Source: Phallusia mammillata
Lineage: Eukaryota
DNA: 64,000 bases
NCBI GenBank assembly: GCA_965637545.1
Contig: OZ281495.1
Span: 19,654,001-19,718,000, forward strand
Direction of reading: 5' to 3'
Part shown: positions 11,861-25,900 of the stretch, one piece after another
Numbering within the stretch: the first letter of the stretch is position 1
Layout of the letters: each line of letters starts with the position of its first letter
Translations under genes and position numbers: made by a program
The notes under the pieces: model-generated
What the model saw: the letters and a program-made list of their open reading frames with translations, nothing else
Told to the model about the DNA's origin: nothing
The model's database searches: none

Positions 11861-13971
11861 CAAAATGTGGCTAGAATCAAATACGAACTATGCTTGTAGT
11901 TAAGTAGATTTGGCAAGCAACGAAGCAAAATCACTTATTCTACCAGACCCAATGTTGTTTACTTGCTTTTGTTTTAACGCACGTGTACATAAACCGTTTT
12001 TCCAAAAGAATATTTTTTCATTTAACTCATGTACAAATTGACATTAGTTACAGTAAAAAGACTGAAAAAAATCTCAAGGCAATGAACATACTTTCGTTTA
12101 GGTTGTGTCTGAAGGTCACAGTGCGTCTATATTAGTACCAACACCTAATTATACAATCAACTAGATTGAGTTGCAAGCTTTCCTATGTTTTTAAAGTCAT
12201 TGTGGCATTTATCGGCGTCGCATATTTGTGCGGATTTGACACAAAACATGGCTTTTAACAAAGCACTAATTCAATGAGTGTGCGCTTGAAGTCTTTGTGT
12301 TTTCAATTTATGATTGGGTTGAATCGACGATCGTCCTAGTTTGAAAAACAGACGCTCGTAAACCGCCTGACCGCGCGGTATGAATCGCCCGAGATCGCTT
12401 GCGAACGCGCTCCATGTTTGTTTAATGAGCCCAGTTATCTCACTATAAGCTCCTTTTTATTGCTCCCCGCATCGCGCGCGGCTTCGCATTTATGTCGCCT
12501 TGACAACGTTCAATTTAAACAACAAAGAGGTCATAATTGTTTGGGATTCCAAAGCAGTATACGACCAAACTATTCCACTTGCGAGACATTTAACTGATGC
12601 TGGATACACAAGTCGACAAGCGAACTTGAGTGTCGTGGAATAGGAGTCAGCGAGATATTCGTTGAACCGCAGGCTGTGCCTAGTTGTTCCTCAGAAATGC
12701 ACCTTACAAACAACTCGGTTGTCAGTTGTAAGCTTTCTGAAATAGATAATCAAATAGATATAGATGGAGATATTTAAAATGCACAATCAGTTTGGATTTG
12801 AGAACGGACAAGTTAACTGTACCTTTACGATCAGTAAGTGGGATTGTCATTGCCAACTTGGGCGTGGGGTTGGTCGGCGAGTAGCAACAAGATGCGGTGA
12901 TAGTGCCCTCCTTGCCTAAGAATTTTGCTGTTTTTTGCAATTGTTGACTCGTTGAGCTATGTTTGAGTTAGGACAGATTGTGTGACTTTCGCTCGTCGTA
13001 AGTGAATGATGTGTAAAAGGTAACAATAGTTTAGGAAACAAAGTGCATGCCTTTATGAATGGTTATCGAGACCTCTATTGTATCGGTGGCCCCATAACCG
13101 ATTGTGGCTGTTTCTTGGACAACAATGGCTGTGGTTACGATTCGTTTCACTTCACAAAATATGGTTATGTTTAAACCTGCCGCCCTTTTCAGTTGCCTTC
13201 CGACTTCCGAGTTATCGCATAAGTCTAGTTGCAAACTGATGTTAACGACCATGTTTGATCAAAGCTGCGCTGGTTCGGGCATGTTCCTCATTTCGGTCAT
13301 TAAGTTCCAATGTTTCACTTTTCGAGTCAGCGATTGCGTCTGGTGGCAAACATCCCGAAGTCTTGTAAGTAGGACGGATAAGTACACTTTCACGTGGCGG
13401 ACAAATGAAAATGAGCGGCGCTTGTGGAATTTCAAATGAGTTCCAGCACGCATGACCCCGTAAACATCAGAGCAACGTGGGTCACTTCTGTTTCTGTATA
13501 GCGGCGTGTAAATAAAAGTGACTTCTTCCTCTTACCCCGCTCGCCTTTGTTTCTTGGTTGCGGCGTGCTCGCTCGCTCGCTACTCGACGTTTACTCACCC
13601 ATTCATCGCTGCTCTCATTCGGCGTTTTGAGTATTCCAATGTGTGGAACGAACATCTGTAATAACCAGCCGGCCTTTTTCACGCTGTGATTCCTATGCGG
13701 CTTGTTAGACAAAACTGTAGGTGACTGGTTCGCTGCCGTCTCACATTAACATAGCGAGATTCCGTTGTGAGAAGCGAAACGTATAGGTAAAATTAGTTTG
13801 TAAGTAGCTTGGTACAGAAAAAGCGTTTGTCTTCAAGATTTTGACGTAGGCGTAAAAAAGTGAACTTATTAGCCTACACAATGTAATCGTATGTATTCAT
13901 GTACGATGTTTGGCACTTGTAGGTTGTGTTTGTAAGTAGCAACCAGAGTAAACTGTTGGATATTTATCTAC

Positions 13972-16900
13972 ATGAGTCGCAGATATTCAAGAAACGGAAG
14001 AAGTTCAACTGATCGATCTAACGAAGTTCCTCTCGAGCAAGTCATACAAGTAAGTATGCTAACATTGTTAAAGTACAACTTACATAATCAAAATGGGCCA
14101 AGTTTACACATAATTTCAAATGTGGCTAAACGCACGGCCCAAATTTGGTTACTTATGGGACGGCAATAAAGCCCTGACCAAAATTTGCTTTTGATAACGT
14201 AGTTCAAACATGGTACCGCTAATAAAGACAACCATGCTGCATTACAATAAACTCGATGGTACTTAAATATTCCTAAGTAGACGCCCCTCTGGATCGGATT
14301 TAAAACATCATGTCTAGCAACCACGAACCAATTTTATCACAAATGTCCTTGAAACATATATTCGTTATTAGCAAAATCCTATAGGTTAGTTAGAAAATTA
14401 TGACGTTACATCGTGTTAACTAAATCCCCTTAGTTCCGCCCCCAGCAGTGAACAATGTATGTTCGGTTTTGTTGTGCAACACGCAGAACAATGTAACTGT
14501 TTTTACGAACACAGTTTGGGGCTGGGATTAAATTTCACTAATGTACTTTTACCGTCTGGAAACTTGGCGTGAGAATTTCTACGTGTATCGACAGAAATAT
14601 TAACAAAATGTCATAACAAAACCGAACCACAACTAATTGGCTTAAAGTGTTTTGGAAGAACATGGTAGATATCGGTTCAAAGTTGTGTAACAACGGCCTG
14701 CTACTGTGGCTAGCCGCGAGGACCTCTCTTTCTCTCCGGGTCGCAGCGTTTGTTTTAGTTTGAAAATTTCAAATCGGAACAACCGTTGATGGTCGTCGCC
14801 CGTTGCTCCGACTGAGCAAACAACGAGCGAGTACGTTCTTGCCCGTCTCGCGTTACTCCCGAACTTTTACTGTACACAGTAGAAGATGGTGTAGCGTTTT
14901 TTCGCCGGCGATTTAATACATTTGCGAATTACGCTGTTGCTAAAGACGCCTTTGCTTCAAGCTGCACCATACAGTTTCGTAGCGTATAAAAATGTTTTAA
15001 CAAAGTACGCGCAGTCGACTTCCACCTTTGCAAGTTTAAAAAAAATGGCCACATGACACTAATCAAACCCTCTGATATTTTCATCAAACATTTTTGTCTT
15101 GCAGTACTGCTACTAGGTATTGTTTTTGGGCAACAACCGTTTTGTTGCAAAATATCGTTTCCCGGGTGATACTCATACGTATTTGTAACTGAACAGTAGA
15201 TTTATGTGAACAGATATTTAATCAAGTTGATATCGGTACATTGGTGTAACCGAGTTTTCGCGGTGACAAATCAAATATGACCGGCTATTTGGTCACTATT
15301 GGAGATTGTTTGTTCTCTAACGGCCGAAAACAGACATCGCGTTGTGAAGCTCCCAGCGTGTAAAGACACGACCGCAATGCAAACTTAGCTTGTTGACCTG
15401 CAAACGATGACGCCTAAAACCTCCATTCCCATGGAATCACCGGCGCCCAAGAAGACTCGTAGTGTGTAGCGAGTCGTTATAGTCGGAATGTTGTATTTGG
15501 TCACGTGGGTAACCGACTTCAATGTTAGGTTTTGGCGGGAAGTTAATTATTACCTACCAACAACAAACTGCATGTGTAAAAGTGTGTACTTGATGTCTGT
15601 CACGATGGCAAGGGTTTTACCACCTGCACATTTAAAGTGGTTGGTTTAGGTTGAAGTTTTAAACAAACTTTTCAAAAACCAATAAAAAATGTAGTTTTTG
15701 ATCTTTGGCCACATTATAATAAAATGTAATGATATATTAAGTATTTTCCAGTCATGAAATGAACAAAAAAAAAACAATCCTGACAGGCGTTGAACGGGTT
15801 TTCGAACCAGCTGCGTGCAGTCAGTCGAGACATTGTTTGAACACTTCTGTTTAGCGTTGGGATCGTAAAAAACGCGAGTGATTGCATGATAACTTCTCTT
15901 CTGGCCGAAAAACCCTAATATTTGGGTCTCAGCCTTTATTCTGTTTAAGCCTTGTTGTATGTGATAGTAAATGGCTTATATCCTGCTTAAGGGATAAACG
16001 AACAAACAAACAACCTTAAACCACACACTTGCCGGACAAAGTCTTTGTGTTTTGATCTCAACCATTTCACGCATTCGTCTCTTTCGGTACAGTAACGCGT
16101 TCTTTTGCGTGCCCTTGTTTACGCAAAGCGTCACACAAGGAGGGCAAGGAAGAAAAAGCGCGGGCACCAATTAAAAAACTAGCCATTTTAATGTTCCGGT
16201 CAATCTTGGTTTTTCTGCAAAACAACAAAAGATAAAAACACAAGATTTTGAAGTCAAACTTACCAGCACAACGCAAATGGGCAGCTCCAATTGTCAGTCA
16301 AACCAGCTATTTATAACTTACTTACTAACTGCTAATGAAAACAACCTTGTTTAAATTAAAGTCCTTGCCTGAGCGCGTAGATACATATCACACCTGTCGA
16401 CAGCAAACACGCACGTATCACGAGGTAAGATATAAACTATGTATGCAACACCGACATCCACAGAAAGCAGGCAATTTACGTAATCCAATGGAACACTAAT
16501 TGTCCTAACGGCTGTTGCGTCACAGGACAATTGTTACGTTTACTTGGCAAATTTAAATTCACACCGGTTGGTAAAAACGACGTAACAAGTACTATTCACT
16601 AAGTTTCATTACGAACATCGTTTTGGTGCAACGTACACAATATTTGTTAACTTACCAGACTGAGGCGAAATATTTTTAACCACACACGACATTACAACAC
16701 AGCAATTTAAATGTCGATGCTCTTTGTTGCTATTTAGTGGTGTAGTTTGTTTTTCTTCTTAATTAAATCATGGCTTTTTTGCTGACACGATCAATATTTC
16801 GTAATTAGATAATACTCTGTTAAAAAAACGTCGCAACCAACACAAATAACTTTGCTCGTCACTGGGCAAACTTAGGTTTCTTATTTCGGCGAATAATTTT

Positions 16901-19900
16901 TTTTTTTCAATCGGCGGAACTACAGATTTTTGTAGAGAGATGCAAAATTTGACCATCAGTTTTTTTCTAACATCATATATTGTCATGCTGTTATATGTTT
17001 GCAGAACGTGGAAGATACTGTGCTCCGCAACGAACGCGAAGGTTCAGGGGCGTGGTCGATTGGAGCAAGAGTGAGGGAGATCATAACCGAAAATCTCCGA
17101 GAACCAGACAGAAGTAGGCACAGCGACCAAGAAGAAACAATGGCAAAATCAATGCAGGTAATACTGGAACACTCTCCAGCACTACAAGTAAACTAATCCA
17201 TGTTCGAGTTCATAATGTCTGTATTTGATCATGCCAATTAAATTGTTGACATGCGTTTTCATATGTTGGCTTACATATAATTGATTGTTGTAGGAAGAAA
17301 ATCGGATGTTGCAGTCGGAGTTAAGCAGAGTAGAAGATCTGTTGGCTCAATCCCGAGCGGACAGAGATGAAATTGCGATCAAATATAACGCCGTCAGTGA
17401 AAGAGTAAGAATTTGTTAAAATTGTCTCATTTTTTATGTTTTATTGTCACAGTCGTACTCACATAGTCAAAATTGTGTAATGGTTTGCATCAACAACGCT
17501 GTTGATTCAGATGTTTTTCTCCATAACTGAGAAATTGACTGTTCTTCTAGACAGCTTGTGTTTCGTGTAACAATGTAATATTATCCACTAGGTGCCAGTC
17601 ATACCCTAAATTTGCTATGTGTGCTCTAATAGAAACCTTTCGAAAGCTTGAGTGTTCTAGCTAAGCCATTCGGCGACAATTTTGTATCATTCCGAACATT
17701 AGGTAAAAAGTGTCGTCTCATTGTCTTGTTTTGTCAGATTTCATTTTCAATTTACTGCTAATAGATCAGGTCAAGAACGTGTGTATAATTTGCAGCTAAG
17801 AATTTAGACTCCATTGTATGCAATACTAAAGTTGTTTGTATCAAAATAGTAATATTTATCGTATTGTTTATTTCCTTGCTTAGTCTAATGTGGTGGTGTT
17901 TCCACTTACAAACGTCCCCACAAACATCACATTGATATAGTAGAGTGCGTGGCGGGTTTGCAAATTGTATTGGTTACTCAAATAGTTCTAACGTTTTGCT
18001 CTTCAAACGTCCTTGTTGCGCCACTAGCGCCGTCCTTTAGTGTCAAGTAGGCTCTATAGAGGTAAAGGGATTTCATCCAATCAGAACACGCCGTGGTCTG
18101 CGAGATAGCGTCCCTGCCGGTGTCCAGTTACACATTCACCCTGCCCACTGTTGCACTTGTGTGGCATAATCACAAACAAGCCAAAAAGCTTTGTTACAAA
18201 TTTGATTTGGAGATTCAATAGTTTTTTTGTTTTTTTTTATAAATATCAGTACTATTGTTCTTTACAATTTTAGAAATCTTTTGATAAATCATTGACAGAT
18301 TTTTATGGTTTCTACAGTGTAGAGGCGAGGACTCGGTCCAAGCCCTACTAATAGGTCTGGTATACAGTATTTGACAAATTGTAGCATGTGGATAAAGTAC
18401 GTGCAGGTGCCATGAAGCTGGGTACCTGCTAATTTATTGGAAATATAAAAGAAAGATAATGGACTGGGATTTACGAGTCGGTGGCTTATAGCATAAGAGA
18501 GGGAGTAAGGTTGCCCTTTTTCGTCACGCGTGTTTGCTTCGATTGATTCGATTACAAGGTATTGGTGAACACGCGTCAAGTGAAATACTTCGGATATTGA
18601 GTAACAAAGCCTTTACTGATTAGGCATTTCACTGTCTTTCAGTTACGCCACTCACTTGCGGTTAGTGGCATGTGGGAAGCTCATCAATGTCAGCACGGTT
18701 GGTCTCTGTGTGTTTAGACAGTTTGACAGGGCACAACCATTATGCCGATTTGCTCTTGATTACATAATACACAAACGATTAATCAACTGCATAGTATCGC
18801 GTGCACGAGTTTGGTGAACAGTTTAGACTTTAGAGGTTGATAGATGTCAGTCAGTTGTAGTGAGTAATTTTACTTCGTACAGAACATTAGATCCAGTGTT
18901 TAGAGTTAAGACGAGCGGCGATTGCCCATAGCAACCACAGTACAGGAGAATTCGTTTTCTCTTAGCCGCATTTGACGCACGTAACCTAAAAAAATATTTA
19001 ACACACTTTTTTCTAGTGGCAAACTTTATGTCAATTTCCTTTCTATATTTTGGTCAAAACATGGCAACCAGAAAAATCTGAGATACTGAAATGTTTTGTT
19101 TTATCTACTGATTTAAGGTTGTGGTATAAACGGTAGGTTAGCAAGGATATTAGTGGTGTCGTAATGTCGTCAAACACTAGCACCGAAGAAGAAGAAAGTC
19201 CTCCTGAGTCTGTGCGCTCAAGGGTCGACCGTGTAAGTTTTAATTGAGACAAATGACACATTTCTTTTTCACTATGAATCAAAATTTAATACACATATTT
19301 TAACCACATGCGCTTGATTTGCTGTGATTTGGGAACATATGGCCTTAAACTAACCACAACGTTTTTTGATTTGTTACCAGCTGGAGCAAGCCTTGAAATT
19401 AGAAAAGGGTGAACGGGACAAAGGAGTAATGGAGAATAAGACTCTGCAAATGGAGGTGAATATTGCCTGCAGTGTAAAGCTAACATTTAAATTACGCATG
19501 TTTACACATTGACAATATGGTGCGGTCGATCGGTTTGTGCCGCTTAAACGGCTGGCCCAGAAAATCCGATTTTTGTCACGTAACACAATACCTACCAAGA
19601 ACAATTTGGGTGGTGGACTAGCGAGAAATCAGCCAAACTGGCCTTTTGGACAAGCAACATATCCTTAGAGTTTGTTTTTATTTTCTGTTTCGTGAAAATG
19701 GCATACGACGCGCTTCGTGATCGAACTGAGGTAGTTGTTGAAAAAAACTGCAATAATTCTAGATATCCAAAGTTTGCTTACGTTGTATATATTTGTAGAA
19801 CGCTCGACTTCGCCAGAAATTGGATGAAGAACAAGCTTCTTACAAAAGAAAACTACAAGCATACCAAGAAGGACAACAGCGCCAAGCTCAACTTGTTCAG

Positions 19901-22900
19901 AAACTCCAGAGCAAGGTATGGTCAAAAACTCTTTAATTATACACTGGAGTTATATTTGTTATATTTAACACTGGGAAGTTTCAAAATGCCACGCAAGGTT
20001 GAAGCATTCAGCCATTCAGATATTTATTCGTTTGGATTCTTCACGGTTGTTTAGTTATCAAAGTATTCCACTTACGGTTACGGCGGTGGCGATTCCGTTT
20101 CTTTAGCGTTGTTTCGGTAAGTCATTGTGCTCTGTCAGCTTGAAAATGTGGTTGCTACCGACAACAGCGTGTGTCCGCTTTTGTTCACTTGAATTCTAAA
20201 CCCGCTCTGGCGTGAGGGAAACAATAATTTGTTGGTTAGGGTTGTGTGTCAGTTTCTTTTTGTTCACCTCATTTAAAGGTTTTCCCTTTGTGCAACCTTT
20301 AAGTTAGAACAAACGGTTATGTGTTGATGAATCAATTATTTTCAAGTCACTCTGAGCGCATTTAAGTTCAAACTGCATGATTGCGTTTTTGTACTACAAC
20401 AGGTTAATGGATTAGCCGCTGTATTTGTTGCATTTTACTCAACCGGTATAGACCAAACGAAACTCATATTGGTTATTAAATTTCACGTCTTTGTCAAGCC
20501 CTTTTGTAATCAACAACGTATGTTTGGAGGTCGGTTTAAATGCCTCACCCTTGAACGCCGCCCGTCTGGCAATCACCTTCTAATCAAACACTAGGGACCG
20601 AGCGACGTAACATAGTGATCCCCTTTTCCCTCAATGTAGCCCAGCTCGATTCTTTGTTGTTTTTTTCGCGCGATTCATAACACTATCGCGGGAGTGTGCC
20701 CTAGCAATTCTGAAGGACGCCGGCATAGAATTGTGAGCCCACAAATATTACCCACTGCGCGTGATGGAAGCGGATACTTGTAGAGTTGTTATGGAATCAG
20801 TGTCAGAGTTGAAAGCCGGTAGTTCTGTGTTTTGTTGAGCAAACACATCTACTCGTGTATGCGTGTGTTTTGTATATGTATAGGTGAGGGTAACAAGACA
20901 CGGTGTTGCAATATAGAATGTTTAAAGCCATGTTTTTAAATAATATCTGAGATGAACACTTCCGTTGGTGATTGCAGAACCTTTCAGAGATTGTGAAATT
21001 TGATTGTTTTTGTAATGAGTGATAAAAAAGAGTTGGAAGGCCTGAAGGCGCAGGTATACAAATGCTAGTTTGTTGTAGCGGACATTTAATTGTGTAGCAT
21101 TATTTTTTGTAACCTAATTGACTTTATATGCAGGTTCTCCAATACAAGAAAAAATGTGGCGAGCTCGAAGAGGAAGTTGCTTTGCTCAGGTCGGAGTCCG
21201 ACAGATCACGAATGGAGGTAATTCTTAACAAGTCATGAGTGTATGGTATTTTGGTGTTTTCAATCTCGATTTCAAGTTGCTAGAATATAGAGATAAGGGA
21301 TTTTGGTTTTGCAAATTACTATTTGCTAGTTTGCCTCATTTGTTCTAGCTTTCGGAAACGACTGACACTCTAAAGAACCGTTTGGATTCAACGGAAGCGC
21401 GTCTTCGCCGCACCGAGGAATCCCACACCACTGACCTTGAGGATGCGCTTATCAAGTTAGAGGAGGAAAAACAAAAGTACGTTTTTTTAACAAACCATAT
21501 AACTTATGTTATAATCTGTAAAGTAAAAACATTCGAGTTGAACTGCCAAAATGCTTCTAAAATAAGTGTGCAAACACTTCTGCAAAGCCAAAATAATGGC
21601 ACAAATACTATCAAGTTAATTACTAAAGTTCTTAAAGGTAGTCGATTATTAGTCTGTTGCGGATAAATTTCAAGCACAAAACGAAATTCTTGTGACGTCG
21701 TGCCTCCCGTCATACCCACCAAGCGCAATGTTTTCTTAGCAATTGTATCGGAACGATCCTGGCCAATCAGAACGCGAGTCTGCGCGTCTTGTGGTGCCTT
21801 TGACTACACCGGCGTTCTCTCGCTGAATTCGAATAACAAAACGTACCTCCTGGAATTTGGCTAAAAGGAACTGACTTAAAGTCAAAAGTTTTTTATATTC
21901 ACGCTTTGACACGATGTTGGTCTTTGGCAAACGCTTTAGTCTGTGCCGTTTATGTTTGCTTTCAACCGCCTTTCATTGAACCGGTTAGCGAATTGTAAAA
22001 CGTCACGCCGTCATTGACCGGCGTCCATACAACTCGCTACTTTTGAATTTCCGATGTTTGCATTTCAACCGTACGCGTGGACAAATAACCCAGAGCGTAT
22101 TTTCGCACTATTTTAACCACATACGCCCTGACAAAATATAAAACAACTGAAGGTGTATCTGAAGTGTTTTAATTAATTGCACCAATTTAATACCAATTAA
22201 TTTAAAGATGCGAAAGTTTGACCGAAATCAACTCTATGCTCCGGGATCAACTTGCACAAGCCAACCAATCCAATGGTGAACTTACTGACGACCTTCGTGC
22301 TGTCACTGAAGACTGGAACGACGTCAAGGAAGAGCTGCGACGTAAGGAAACCGAGTGGAAGGAAGAGCAAGAGGTATAATGTCAATCACTTCGTAATATT
22401 ACCAGACCCTTAGGGTGACGCTCTTTCACGTATCCGCCATCAGTGACAACAAACACGCGTCAATCAACCAACAAAAACAAACTTACTTATAATTAATCAT
22501 GTTTTATCGCAATTCCACGGTCTTACGTACACGAATAAATTAGTTTACTAAGGAACTGATTGTAGTCTCGGGCATACGCAATAATGGGACAAAAATCTTT
22601 GATCGTTTTTCTACAATGCGTTCCTAACATTTGATTTTGAACAATGAATGTATTGTCATTTATTGATTTTTGTGCTGCTTTTCCTTCCAGAATTTCAGCT
22701 CCTATTTCGGTGACGAGCACAGTCGATTGTTGGCTCTGTGGCGTGCCGTTGTTCAAATTCGCCGTGGTTTCAACGATCTCAAATCGAACACACAGCGTGA
22801 TCTCGAGCAGGCGGCCAATAATGTCCAGGTATAATAAGTTTCTTGTTTAATATCTTTTGTTTTCACAATGCGAAATGTTGCGGGTTTTTGTTAGTCGCCT

Positions 22901-25900
22901 CAAGTCTTGTTTGTCGCACAATCGGTATGTTGTTTGCCTAAGATATATCACGCTGTAGACAAAGTGGGATTTTTCAAGTGTGCTTATTGTTTTTTATTAT
23001 TCCAGCGTGGTGCTAGGGAGCTGCATGCGGCGTGTCTCAACTTGAACTCCAACCAAAGTGTGCAGGACACATCCGCAAAGGTGTCGCTAGAGCGCGAGAA
23101 GACCGAACGCGGCGACATCGAAGGACAATTGCGCAACAAGGTGCGTTTTGTAATTCATGGGAAAGTATGTCCGATACGTAAAAAGTTGTGCCTGGCTCAA
23201 TGATGGTGCAGATTAAAAAACACAAAAAAAGTTGTAGTTTGCCCGCATCGTTGATGTTGCTTTCGTGTTGACCCGAAAAAAAGCGTGTATCTGAGAATAG
23301 AATGTTTTGCAGGTTAAGGAAATGCTTCAGATGCAGTCTGACTTCGACTCCGAAAAAGCGCGGTTGAATGCTCGCATCAACGAACTCACGGTGGCTTATG
23401 ATCGAGCCAAGTCTCAGCTCAGCGACAAGGACCGAACCATCAACGATTTAAGCTCTTCGGCAAGACCTCTGGTAAGTTATTGTGCCTAACTTCTAACAGC
23501 TTGACATATTTGTACTGACATTGCAAGAAAATGTCCTTGATGCCCTGCTTTAATTCCGTTTTTTGTTGTACAGGAAAGTACACGTGTTGATGGCGGCGTG
23601 GAAGATGAGGAGGCTGCTGCAACCGTGGCTGAAGAGAAACGGGCATTGGAGCAAGCTCTGCGTGATATTGCCCAGTCAGTAATTGCCGACGCTGACCTTG
23701 CGATGGCATTATCTGATAGTCCAAGAGCATCAGCCGTACAAGAGCTAACCGAATCCATGGCTGATCTCGGCATCGGTTCCTCGCCAAGGTAATAAGCACG
23801 TAACGCCCAAGGAACGTGTGTGTGCATATTCATAATTCCAAACGTAGGTGGTAAATCGGGCCAGTTACGTTGGTTTAATGGAGTGGAAAAGCCGTTTGAA
23901 ATATTTATCATGCGTGTATTTTTCTCGGATTAGCCAACCAGGTGTTTAGTCCTGGAGGAGGTGGTTATGAATTTAGGAACAATTGTTGTGTAAGAAAGTC
24001 ATTGAGAGTTAAGTTTACTTGTTTTCATCACAGTTACCAGAAACAAATATTGATAACTTCACACGTTTTTTGCCAGACCTGTGCATTCCATAGTTAAGGT
24101 CGTTAAGCCTCCTCGCCGCAGCGGCTCTTATGGCATATTTGCTAAACTCTAAACTGGCCCAAATCTACGCGAAGTATGTCCAAAGGCACTTATGCCTCTT
24201 CACTCGGTGGTTTTATTGTTTGGTTCGTTAGAGAGTCCCTCTTTTTGCCAGGACGCTTGTCCTTCAGTTAACCAAGCTTGATAGTGACTTTTTGCAGCAA
24301 GCGTTGTATATCGCAGTTCGGCGCAGAGTGAAGATTCTAAGAGGTTTTTGCTAAAGTTATATTGTTTCTTAGTTAAGCACGGTGACTTTAGTAAAGTTCG
24401 GGTTTGTCTTCAGCAATATAAAAATAGTAACAGCTTTAGCGCGTAATGCACTCAACACCAAAAGTTGGAAAAGTAAGAGATTTGATAAGGCAGTATCAAG
24501 CAGCATCTGCCGAAAGAACTGGAAAAAAGATTTCGTTGGTTTCGCGTGCAAGTCCAAATTTTTCTGCAATCAGTTCTGATGACAGCGGGTTTTTGTCGCC
24601 TGGTCTGCAAGGTTCATTTGTCGAGGACAGTTCAGTGTTTTTGCATGGAGCTCATTTGAACGAAGAGTTGGCAGAAACTGACGATGTTGTGTCGCCTTTG
24701 CGCTCATACACATCTGCGCGGTCGAGAAGAACTAGCCCCGATAGTCACAAGCATGTGCGGTACAAAATATGCGTGGGAAAGAAAGTGAAATGCGATTACT
24801 GTAAAACAAACATAAGCAAGAAGACATACGACCACAGTAAATGCACATGTTCAGTCTCTCCTGCCACTTATCAAACCACTTTTGTGCGCGTTTGGCCGAA
24901 GGAGGCAAGGTGATAAAACTAAACAGCTCCATTATTTTTGCATGTTGTATTAGCAGTATTAAACTCTTGGTTTTTATGTTTTTGCAGGAGAAGTTATTCT
25001 CCACTCAGATCTCCATCCCCTGGACGTAGATCACCCCGCCGCGGAAGATCTCCAGGTATTAGAGGAGTCTCTCCGTCCTTTGCTGATTCAACATACAACG
25101 CGGTTCAGGCAGCCTTGCAAAAGAGGCAACTCCAAGTACAGGTATAAGCGCACGGTTGTTTGAGCCACGTACCATGCCATAACAATCTTTGTTTTAAAGG
25201 AACTACGTGCCAAGTTGGAAGCGGCTCGCGACGCAGCTTCGTCGCTGAAGAAACAAGCTGCGAACAACGACGCAGATAGAAAGACTTTGGAAGGAGAAGT
25301 TTTGGCTCTTAAGGAAGAACTAGATAACGCAACTCGAGCTAAAGATGAAGCTAAACGCGATGCCTACCGTTATAAATCAAGTGCTGACGTGGTTGGAAGG
25401 TAAGCTATAGATATATATACATAAAATGTTGTAATTTTATGCACATATATAATTAATGTGCATTCTTCAGTGAGAAGAACGAGATGGGTAAGGAGCGTCA
25501 AAGCCTTCAAGGTCGTATTGATGCTCTTGTTGCCGAAAAGGATAGACTGCAGGCCGCCAATGCAGAACTACAAAGACAGAGAGACAATGTTGAAGATGAA
25601 AAGGAGGATCTGCTAAAAGATCTTGCTCGGAAAGAGAAGGAACTACAGAGAGGGTATGTTGCAACGAAATGTTTCACCGAGGTTTCAATGTGTTTTAATT
25701 GAATTTTTGTGTTGATGCGCAGTATTTCGGCTGTGGACAACATGGATGATAAGCAGTCGTCCCTGCGAGAGCAACTTGTCACCACCAAGGAAGCTCTGAA
25801 TAGAGCCGTCTTGGACAAAGAGATTATGGAAGCTGAAAAGGCTGAAGTCGTCGAAGCATTGGCAAAGGTAAATAGCTTCAAGCAAAATTGTTAACTCGAA

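What the first reader, a model, noticed from the sequence alone, without database searches (positions are those of the whole stretch)
18900..24987. Array of internal start exons in rootletin: a nested N-terminal truncation series
Seen: besides ATG 13972, four intronic ATG-led exons each end in a GT donor whose phase matches the next constitutive exon: 19164-19232 to 19381, 19698-19730 to 19799, 21015-21053 to 21134, and 24446-24759 to 24988. Three sit in three consecutive introns, which is unlikely by chance. X-box-like motifs (18921, 19060, 20151) and CCAAT boxes (18077, 21763) lie nearby. Established: rootletin polymerises into striated ciliary rootlets, and RFX factors drive ciliary genes through X-boxes. 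Inference: up to five promoters give rootletins with different heads on a shared coiled-coil tail, possibly tuning rootlet architecture per ciliated cell type. This is the best candidate for an undescribed system here.
Basis: partly seen in the sequence, partly recalled or inferred. Interest (0 to 1): 0.72.

Follow-up and report, generated by a model that had tools for sequence, protein, structure and literature searches.

The report
Conserved alternative start exons in rootletin
Three of the four proposed extra start exons inside this rootletin (ciliary rootlet) gene are conserved in a related species and so probably encode alternative protein heads, but no transcript using them appears in the RNA data I could check.

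Summary
The gene is a rootletin/CROCC homologue on the + strand. Assembled transcripts from four runs (two studies) join only the constitutive exons and continue upstream into the exon ending at 17404. None covers any of the four candidate exons.

Every one of the 10 introns tested holds in-phase ATG..GT frames.

Comparison with the same locus in a related species changes the picture. Synonymous sites there are saturated and introns do not align, yet three candidates are kept as ATG-led, donor-ended frames in the matching introns:
- **c1 (19164-19232):** strong match.
- **c3 (21015-21053):** same 13 codons, moderate match.
- **c4:**
- **c2 (19698-19730):** no counterpart; it looks like chance.

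Both CCAAT boxes (18077, 21763) and the X-box-like site at 20151 lie in conserved non-coding blocks. The sites at 18921 and 19060 do not.

Best reading: one canonical and three alternative first coding exons give rootletins with shortened or replaced heads. Expression, start sites and promoters remain unshown. Alternative first exons are a known kind of feature, so interest is moderate.

The parts
13972..14049 (+). Canonical first coding exon e1 (26 codons, donor GTAAGT)
   Evidence: Read directly from the sequence. The X2 transcript contig has about 398 letters before 19381, against 342 nt for the e1 coding part plus e2 plus e3. Borders are inferred and not covered by laid contigs. No counterpart was found in the fetched part of the relative's contig.
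17005..17157 (+). Constitutive exon e2 (51 codons)
   Evidence: AG/GT borders read from the sequence. 67% amino-acid identity to the relative at L007 5383-5535.
17294..17404 (+). Constitutive exon e3 (37 codons), spliced to 19381
   Evidence: The loose end before 19381 in all four runs equals 17375-17404, followed by GTAAGA. 97% amino-acid identity to the relative.
17979..18134 (.). CNE1: conserved non-coding block holding the CCAAT box at 18077 (CCAATCAGA kept); candidate promoter or enhancer upstream of c1
   Evidence: blastn 75% over 160 nt to the relative, in the same order between e3 and c1. Alignment. Similar in all reading frames, so non-coding. Single copy in the genome.
19164..19232 (+). 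c1: conserved alternative ATG-led coding exon, 23 codons, donor GTAAGT, phase 0, fits exon 19381
   Evidence: The relative has MASNSEDEELAPESVRSRVDK|GTAAGC in the orthologous intron. tblastn E 2e-6. Global score 67 against a null maximum of 19. 0 of 20,000 shuffles reach that score. pN 0.19 against pS 0.63. No RNA contig covers it.
19381..19455 (+). Constitutive exon
   Evidence: Contig joints in 4 runs. 100% amino-acid identity to the relative.
19698..19730 (+). c2: ATG-led 11-codon frame with a weak donor (GTAGTT); judged a chance frame
   Evidence: The best counterpart in the orthologous intron scores -3, against a null top of 15. No tblastn hit. No RNA contig.
19799..19915 (+). Constitutive exon; start of the Pfam Rootletin domain (profile positions 1-24)
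20138..20282 (.). CNE2: conserved non-coding block with an X-box-like site at 20151-20165; candidate RFX-responsive enhancer or promoter upstream of c3
   Evidence: blastn 76% over 148 nt, alignment. The window site is GTTGTCGGTAGCAAC on the minus strand, with 1 mismatch. The aligned site in the relative, GTCGCCAGTGGCAAC, fits GTNRCC-N3-RGYAAC fully (read by hand).
21015..21053 (+). c3: probable conserved alternative ATG-led coding exon, 13 codons, donor GTATAC, phase 0, fits exon 21134
   Evidence: The relative has MTDSREVSKLKEQ|GTGTGG, also 13 codons, in the orthologous intron. Score 31 against a null maximum of 8 among 566 candidates. Shuffle p 5e-4 per comparison. No in-frame acceptor lies upstream in either species. 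No RNA contig.
21134..21217 (+). Constitutive exon (Rootletin profile positions 25-50)
21745..22112 (.).
   Evidence: blastn and tblastx, alignment. Single copy in the genome.
22691..22828 (+). Constitutive exon; end of the Pfam Rootletin domain (profile positions 140-184)
   Evidence: 52.2 bits against a cut-off of 36. Joints.
23574..23788 (+). Last constitutive exon of the head region; ends in phase 2
   Evidence: Joints. 92% amino-acid identity to the relative.
24446..24909 (+). c4, revised: conserved alternative ATG-led coding exon, 154 codons + 2 nt, donor AAG|GTGATA, phase 2, fits exon 24988. Encodes a lineage-restricted, mostly disordered head.
   Evidence: Its only relative among 1.84 billion representatives is P0001 (E 1.8e-13). 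P0001 is encoded in the orthologous rootletin intron. Similarity runs from just after the Met to TYQTTFVRVWP and stops 3-4 codons before an AAG|GT phase-2 donor in both species. pN 0.39 against pS 0.75. No long minus-strand frame in the window. No in-frame acceptor upstream. Single copy. No RNA contig.
24988..25057 (+). Constitutive exon (Ser/Pro/Arg-rich linker) that c4 would join
   Evidence: Joint 23788 to 24988 in 4 runs. 96% amino-acid identity to the relative.

Best explanation
This rootletin gene has, besides its canonical first coding exon (ATG 13972), three further ATG-led coding exons inside its 5' introns: c1 (19164-19232), c3 (21015-21053) and c4 (24446-24909). All three are under protein-level constraint.

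The most likely mechanism is that each is the first coding exon of a transcript started inside the gene, or given its 5' end there. Each would be spliced in frame to the next constitutive exon (19381, 21134 and 24988):
- **c1** would replace the first 114 residues with 23.
- **c3** would replace the first 178 residues with 13, starting inside the Rootletin domain.
- **c4** would replace the whole head of about 520 residues with a new, mostly disordered head of 155 residues placed in front of the coiled-coil rod.

Conserved non-coding blocks with a CCAAT box (17979-18134) and an X-box-like site (20138-20282) lie upstream of c1 and c3 and are candidate control regions. c2 is a chance frame.

**Shown:** the exon anatomy, cross-species conservation, phase compatibility and the canonical splice chain. 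**Inferred:** the splicing of c1, c3 and c4 to the downstream exons, the internal start sites, the promoters, and any effect on rootlet assembly.
For: **The gene.** It is rootletin. Pfam PF15035 maps in order on successive exons, and one exon alone scores 52.2 bits against a cut-off of 36.

**The comparison species.** The orthologous locus sits on metagenome contigs. Constitutive exons there are 67-100% identical in amino acids, but pS is 0.79, which is saturated. Introns do not align apart from a few blocks.

**The three conserved exons.** Against that background c1, c3 and c4 are kept in the matching introns. Similarity starts at the ATG and stops at a same-phase GT donor.
- Of 71 ATG-led frames of 10 or more codons in 12 introns, only these three hit in the orthologous intron.
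- Scores are 67 (null maximum 19) for c1 and 31 (null maximum 8) for c3. Shuffle p is below 5e-5 and 5e-4 respectively.
- c4 has E 1.8e-13 to P0001.
- pN is below pS in all three. For example, TYQTTFVRVWP is identical in protein but has 7 silent differences.
- c3 in both species, and c4 in the window, have no in-frame acceptor between the upstream stop and the ATG, so they cannot be in-frame internal exons.

**Conserved motifs.** CCAAT and X-box motifs are kept in conserved blocks. Rootletin is a known RFX target in Drosophila (PMC2375033).
Against: - No transcript evidence. In four RNA-like runs from two studies, the single laid contig per run joins only constitutive exons. It continues upstream of 19381 into the exon ending at 17404, and depth is zero over c1, c3 and c4.
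- Word shares of at most 0.16 in all eight RNA-like runs are about what constitutive exons alone would give (my own estimate).
- Conservation rests on a single related species.
- c3 is short, and its significance is moderate after allowing for the number of candidates.
- No conserved sequence lies directly upstream of any of the three ATGs, so start sites are unplaced.
- X-box-like sites are at chance density in the window.
Confidence: 0.6

Rival explanations
1. All four are chance intronic frames, and the gene makes only the canonical protein.
For: In-phase ATG..GT frames occur in every intron. Only the canonical splice chain is seen in RNA contigs.
Against: c1, c3 and c4 are conserved from the ATG to the donor in a species whose introns are otherwise unalignable and whose silent sites are saturated. 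The c4 frame is open for 155 and 189 codons in the two species.
Confidence: 0.07
2. The conserved frames are coding but are not rootletin heads. c4 would be an independent nested single-exon gene for a small protein of about 155 residues. c1 and c3 would be small independent peptides or parts of another transcript.
For: The c4 frame ends in a stop at 24911-24913, one codon past the donor. No RNA joins it to rootletin.
Against: - In the relative the frame runs 36 codons past the end of similarity.
- Similarity stops 3-4 codons before an AAG|GT donor in both species, in the unusual phase 2 that the next rootletin exon needs.
- All three frames match the phase of the next rootletin exon.
- No long frame lies on the opposite strand in the window.
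Confidence: 0.15
3. c1 is an occasionally included internal (cassette) exon between 17404 and 19381, not a start exon.
For: In-frame AG acceptors exist between the upstream stop and the ATG in both species, for example 19136|19137, which would add 32 codons.
Against: The 9 to 23 codons upstream of the ATG are not conserved, while similarity starts exactly at the Met. The candidate acceptors lack pyrimidine tracts. Contigs join 17404 directly to 19381. This reading cannot apply to c3 or c4.
Confidence: 0.08
4. The conserved stretches at c1 and c3 are regulatory DNA, such as splicing or transcriptional enhancers, that merely happen to be open frames.
For: They are short. Other conserved non-coding blocks exist in the same introns.
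Against: The true non-coding blocks were found by blastn at about 75% DNA identity and look alike in all frames. c1 and c3 were missed by blastn and are similar only as protein. Their differences concentrate at silent positions, and the ATG and donor are kept in register.
Confidence: 0.1

Closest known systems
Mammalian rootletin (CROCC): N-terminal head plus coiled-coil rod
   Same: Same family, with the Pfam Rootletin domain mapping in order on the exons. From my own knowledge of Yang et al. 2002 (cited within PMC2375033), the head and rod are separable, and rod-only constructs still form fibres. The c4 junction lies at the Ser/Pro/Arg-rich linker after the head region.
   Different: Here a natural, conserved exon would supply a different 155-residue head. 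It has no detectable relative outside one related species. I found no paper in the held library describing such a series of start exons for rootletin.
Drosophila rootletin (CG6129/Root) as an RFX target with a conserved X-box
   Same: A ciliary gene of the same family whose expression depends on RFX through an X-box found by cross-species conservation (PMC2375033). Here an X-box-like site is likewise conserved between two species.
   Different: The conserved site here is intronic, about 6 kb downstream of the canonical ATG and about 0.9 kb upstream of c3. The window copy has one mismatch, and binding is untested.
Alternative-promoter N-terminal isoform series in other genes (for example RBM20 with an internal start site, PMC13198548; ADGRB1 with an intron-17 promoter, PMC11711277)
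   Same: The same general mechanism is proposed: internal first exons or start sites give proteins with shortened or replaced N-termini on a shared C-terminal body.
   Different: In those cases the transcripts and start sites were shown experimentally. Here only sequence conservation supports them.

Membership tests
Rootletin/CROCC family gene | Pfam Rootletin domain (PF15035) near the N-terminus | tested here: met
   Exon-by-exon hits in profile order: positions 1-24, 25-50 and 140-184. The last exon alone scores 52.2 bits against a cut-off of 36. The relative's frames at the same place carry the same Pfam hit.
Rootletin/CROCC family gene | Long C-terminal coiled-coil rod | tested here: inconclusive
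   Downstream exons give only weak coiled-coil-type hits, such as Tropomyosin at E 6e-4. Open frames down to about 32450 have coiled-coil-like composition.
Alternative first coding exons (alternative promoters) | ATG-led exon ending in a donor whose phase fits the next shared exon | tested here: met
   Met for c1, c3 and c4 in both species, and for c2 in the window only.
Alternative first coding exons (alternative promoters) | Evolutionary constraint on the exon as coding sequence | tested here: met
   Met for c1, c3 and c4. Not met for c2. Only one comparison species was available.
Alternative first coding exons (alternative promoters) | Transcripts that join the exon to the downstream exon | tested here: not met
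   No such joint, and no contig over the exons, in four runs from two studies. These are contigs only, which drop rare variants, and the tissues are unknown. The result is weak evidence of absence.
Alternative first coding exons (alternative promoters) | Transcription start site or spliced-leader acceptor upstream of the exon | not testable with these tools
   Contigs cannot show 5' ends, and no raw-read RNA runs were offered.
RFX/X-box-regulated ciliary gene | X-box (GTNRCC N0-3 RGYAAC) conserved across species near the gene | tested here: met
   The site at 20151-20165 lies in CNE2. It has one mismatch here and is a full match in the relative. Sites at 18921 and 19060 are not conserved. Overall density is at chance, 16 observed against 16.2 expected.
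RFX/X-box-regulated ciliary gene | RFX binding and RFX-dependent expression | not testable with these tools
   Needs ChIP or reporter assays.

The most novel reading that the evidence does not exclude
An internal promoter in the intron at the head/rod boundary of rootletin produces a rod-only rootletin. It would carry a fast-evolving, lineage-restricted 155-residue head with four conserved short motifs: an N-terminal helix G[KR]VR[DE]LIRxYQ, a DSGxxS motif resembling a beta-TrCP phosphodegron, DDV[VL]SPLR, and a four-Cys cluster followed by TYQTTFVRVWP. Together with the c1 and c3 heads, this would form a conserved set of isoforms that tunes rootlet assembly or turnover by cell type.
Probability: 0.4. 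Interest if true: 0.55.

Novelty: new member of a known kind. Interest (0 to 1): 0.42.

Why it matters
Rootletin's head controls how the rod assembles and what it binds. Natural isoforms that shorten the head or swap it for another would give a direct handle on how rootlet and centrosome-linker fibres are made different between cell types.

The c4 exon would also be an example of a new, rapidly evolving protein head recruited onto an ancient structural protein.

In practice, gene models for this locus should carry the three extra 5' exons. The three conserved intronic blocks are ready candidates for reporter assays. Alternative first exons as such are common, so the finding is useful but not surprising in kind.

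Tried and rejected
- **Repeats.** The CCAAT-bearing segments and the c4 frame are not repeats or transposon relics. All are single copy in the 240-Mb genome, and there are no repeat families in 17400-25000.
- **X-box enrichment.** None.
- **RNA families.** No Rfam family in 13000-25200.
- **c4 head, family searches.** Pfam gives only a sub-threshold zf-FCS hint (E 0.062), which is not repeated in the relative's protein, so I dropped it. The ESM Atlas gave no usable hit.
- **c4 head, structure.** The AlphaFold model is low confidence (mean pLDDT 38.7), with one helix at residues 8-22. I made no fold search.
- **Further species.** A metagenome scan for more relatives of c4 returned only the same related species (99.85% identical).
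- **Exact look-up.** The window's c4 product is not on record.
- **Opposite-strand coding at c4.** Rejected. The relative has minus-strand frames of 112-119 residues, but the window has none longer than 90.
- **A first weak c3 match.** The match at L006 6794-6826 was rejected because it has no ATG and no donor. The true counterpart is at L006 9743-9781.
- **Canonical exon e1.** No counterpart was found in the fetched part of the relative's contig.
- **Literature.** Searches found no description of rootletin start-exon series.


Full report
**1. The gene and its real splice chain**

The + strand of 13972 to about 32450 encodes a rootletin/CROCC homologue. The Pfam Rootletin domain (PF15035) maps in order on successive exons:
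- 19799-19915: profile positions 1-24.
- 21134-21217: positions 25-50.
- 22691-22828: positions 140-184, at 52.2 bits against a cut-off of 36.

Eight RNA-like runs hold 0.10-0.16 of the words of 19060-25059. By my estimate, that is about what the constitutive exons alone would give.

I laid four of these runs, from two studies. One transcript contig per run (2.8-7.0 kb) joins, always at GT..AG, the exons 19381-19455, 19799-19915, 21134-21217, 21349-21476, 22208-22373, 22691-22828, 23006-23140, 23313-23471, 23574-23788 and 24988-25057.

Before 19381 every contig continues with the last 30 bases of the exon ending at 17404. The X2 contig has about 398 letters there. That fits exons 17294-17404, 17005-17157 and 13972-14049 plus a short leader. 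So ATG 13972 is the start of the dominant transcript. No contig touches any of the four candidate exons.

These are contigs, which drop rare variants and cannot show 5' ends. They show what is common, not what is absent.

**2. The observation and the chance argument**

The claim that three in three consecutive introns is unlikely by chance is wrong.
- All ten introns tested contain at least two in-phase ATG..GT pairs, 105 in total.
- In shuffled introns the probability of at least one such frame of 10 or more codons is 1.0, 0.87 and 1.0 for the three introns in question.

Only the c4 frame is unusual on its own. It is open for 157 codons (24440-24910), with P about 0.003 in shuffles of that intron.

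X-box-like sites (GTNRCC N0-3 RGYAAC with at most 1 mismatch) occur 16 times in the window against 16.2 expected. The site at 19060 does not reach that threshold.

**3. The turn: an orthologous locus in a related species**

A full HMMER search of 1.84 billion representative proteins with the c4 frame gave exactly one relative. This is P0001, 189 residues, E 1.8e-13.

P0001 is encoded on metagenome contigs of 47-79 kb. It lies about 4.2 kb downstream of, and on the same strand as, frames that hit the Rootletin domain. Walking along these contigs recovered the orthologous rootletin locus. All the contigs come from one species.

Constitutive exons are 67-100% identical in protein. Silent sites, however, are saturated: pS 0.79 against pN 0.06. 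Introns do not align.

Against this background:

- **c1.** The window has MSSNTSTEEEESPPESVRSRVDR|GTAAGT. The relative has MASNSEDEELAPESVRSRVDK|GTAAGC, in the same intron between the orthologues of exons 17294-17404 and 19381-19455. The global score is 67 against a null maximum of 19, and no shuffle of 20,000 reaches it. The nine shared residues PESVRSRVD carry five silent differences. The codons upstream of the ATG are not conserved.
- **c3.** The window has MSDKKELEGLKAQ|GTATAC. The relative has MTDSREVSKLKEQ|GTGTGG, also 13 codons, in the orthologous intron. The score is 31 against a null maximum of 8 among 566 ATG..GT candidates on both strands. Shuffle p is 5e-4 per comparison. After allowing for the tens of candidates in that intron, this is moderately significant.
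- **c4.** Similarity runs from just after the Met (G[KR]VR[DE]LIRxYQ) through SSDDSGF[LF]SP, DDV[VL]SPLR and four conserved Cys to TYQTTFVRVWP. TYQTTFVRVWP is identical in protein but has seven silent differences in DNA. Similarity stops 3-4 codons before an AAG|GT donor in phase 2 in both species: 24909/24910 here and 10470/10471 in L002. Phase 2 is what the next exon needs. The real exon is therefore 24446-24909.
- **c2.** No counterpart. The best score in the orthologous intron is -3.

Of 71 ATG-led frames of 10 or more codons in 12 introns, only c1, c4 and, more weakly, c3 match in the orthologous intron.

For c3 in both species, and for c4 in the window, there is no in-frame acceptor between the upstream stop and the ATG. 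If they are coding, they can only be start exons. c1 could in principle be an internal exon, but conservation begins exactly at its Met. The window has no long frame on the opposite strand at c4.

**4. Conserved non-coding blocks**

blastn found four blocks outside exons:
- 14747-14844: 86% identity, in the first intron.
- 17979-18134 (CNE1).
- 20138-20282 (CNE2).
- 22009-22078, which with 21745-21789 forms CNE3.

They are equally similar in all reading frames, so they are non-coding. No Rfam family matches.

CNE2 keeps the X-box-like site at 20151. In the relative that site is a full match, GTCGCCAGTGGCAAC.

CNE1 lies 1.0 kb upstream of c1 (2.2 kb in the relative). CNE2 lies 0.7 kb upstream of c3 (1.5 kb in the relative). 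Nothing is conserved directly upstream of the three ATGs. The site at 18921 is not in any conserved block.

Rootletin is an RFX target with a conserved X-box in Drosophila (PMC2375033). A conserved X-box at this locus is therefore expected. It could serve the canonical promoter as an intronic enhancer just as well as an internal promoter.

- **c1** would replace the first 114 residues, including the stretch most conserved across animals, with 23.
- **c3** would replace the first 178 residues with 13, starting at profile position 25 of the Rootletin domain.
- **c4** would replace all of about 520 head residues with 155 new ones, joined at the Ser/Pro/Arg-rich linker before the rod.

The c4 head has no Pfam family and no Atlas look-alike. 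It is modelled as one N-terminal helix followed by disorder, at low confidence. Its DSGxxS motif matches the textbook consensus of a beta-TrCP phosphodegron. That is a hypothesis only.

**6. Verdict**

Its statistics are wrong. One of its four exons is chance, and one has the wrong donor.

Its central idea is nevertheless supported by conservation for three exons: several ATG-led start exons feeding a shared rod.

The decisive evidence is missing. That means transcripts, 5' ends and promoters. The available RNA contigs show only the canonical form.

I give about 0.6 to the start-exon model. The main rivals are an independent nested gene at c4, occasional internal use of c1, and regulatory rather than coding constraint on the short exons.

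The mechanism is a familiar one, and I found no paper describing it for rootletin. I therefore class it as a new member of a known kind, of moderate interest.

Another first-stage note on this window (s1-403164) had also proposed a start exon in intron 23789-24987.

Noticed in passing
window 14747-14844 (relative: L007 861-958): A 99-nt block in the first intron is 86% identical between the two species. That is more than any coding exon at the DNA level. It has no Rfam hit, and its fold energy is only mildly below shuffles (z -2.1). It may be an enhancer or an undescribed small RNA.
   Followed up: partly
window 23789-23795: If the intron after exon 23574-23788 were retained, the frame would stop within one codon (…SSPR, then TAA). 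That would give a head-only protein just upstream of the c4 start exon. This matches the idea in note s1-403164 that the gene could be read as two units. No RNA contig supports it.
   Followed up: no
window 21745-22112: A conserved CCAAT-bearing block, and a second conserved block 100-170 nt upstream of exon 22208, have no conserved ATG-led exon after them. They may be an enhancer, or a further internal start site reading straight into exon 22208.
   Followed up: partly
L002 9219-9231 and 9791-9802; window 24033-24044: One-mismatch X-box-like sites lie 0.2-0.8 kb upstream of the c4 ATG in both species, but they do not align with each other. This is compatible with chance.
   Followed up: partly
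L009 against L002 (c4 counterpart): Two samples of the related species differ inside the most conserved motif (TYQTTFVRVWP against TYQTTLVRVWP). This is a within-species amino-acid polymorphism in the c4-type head.
   Followed up: no
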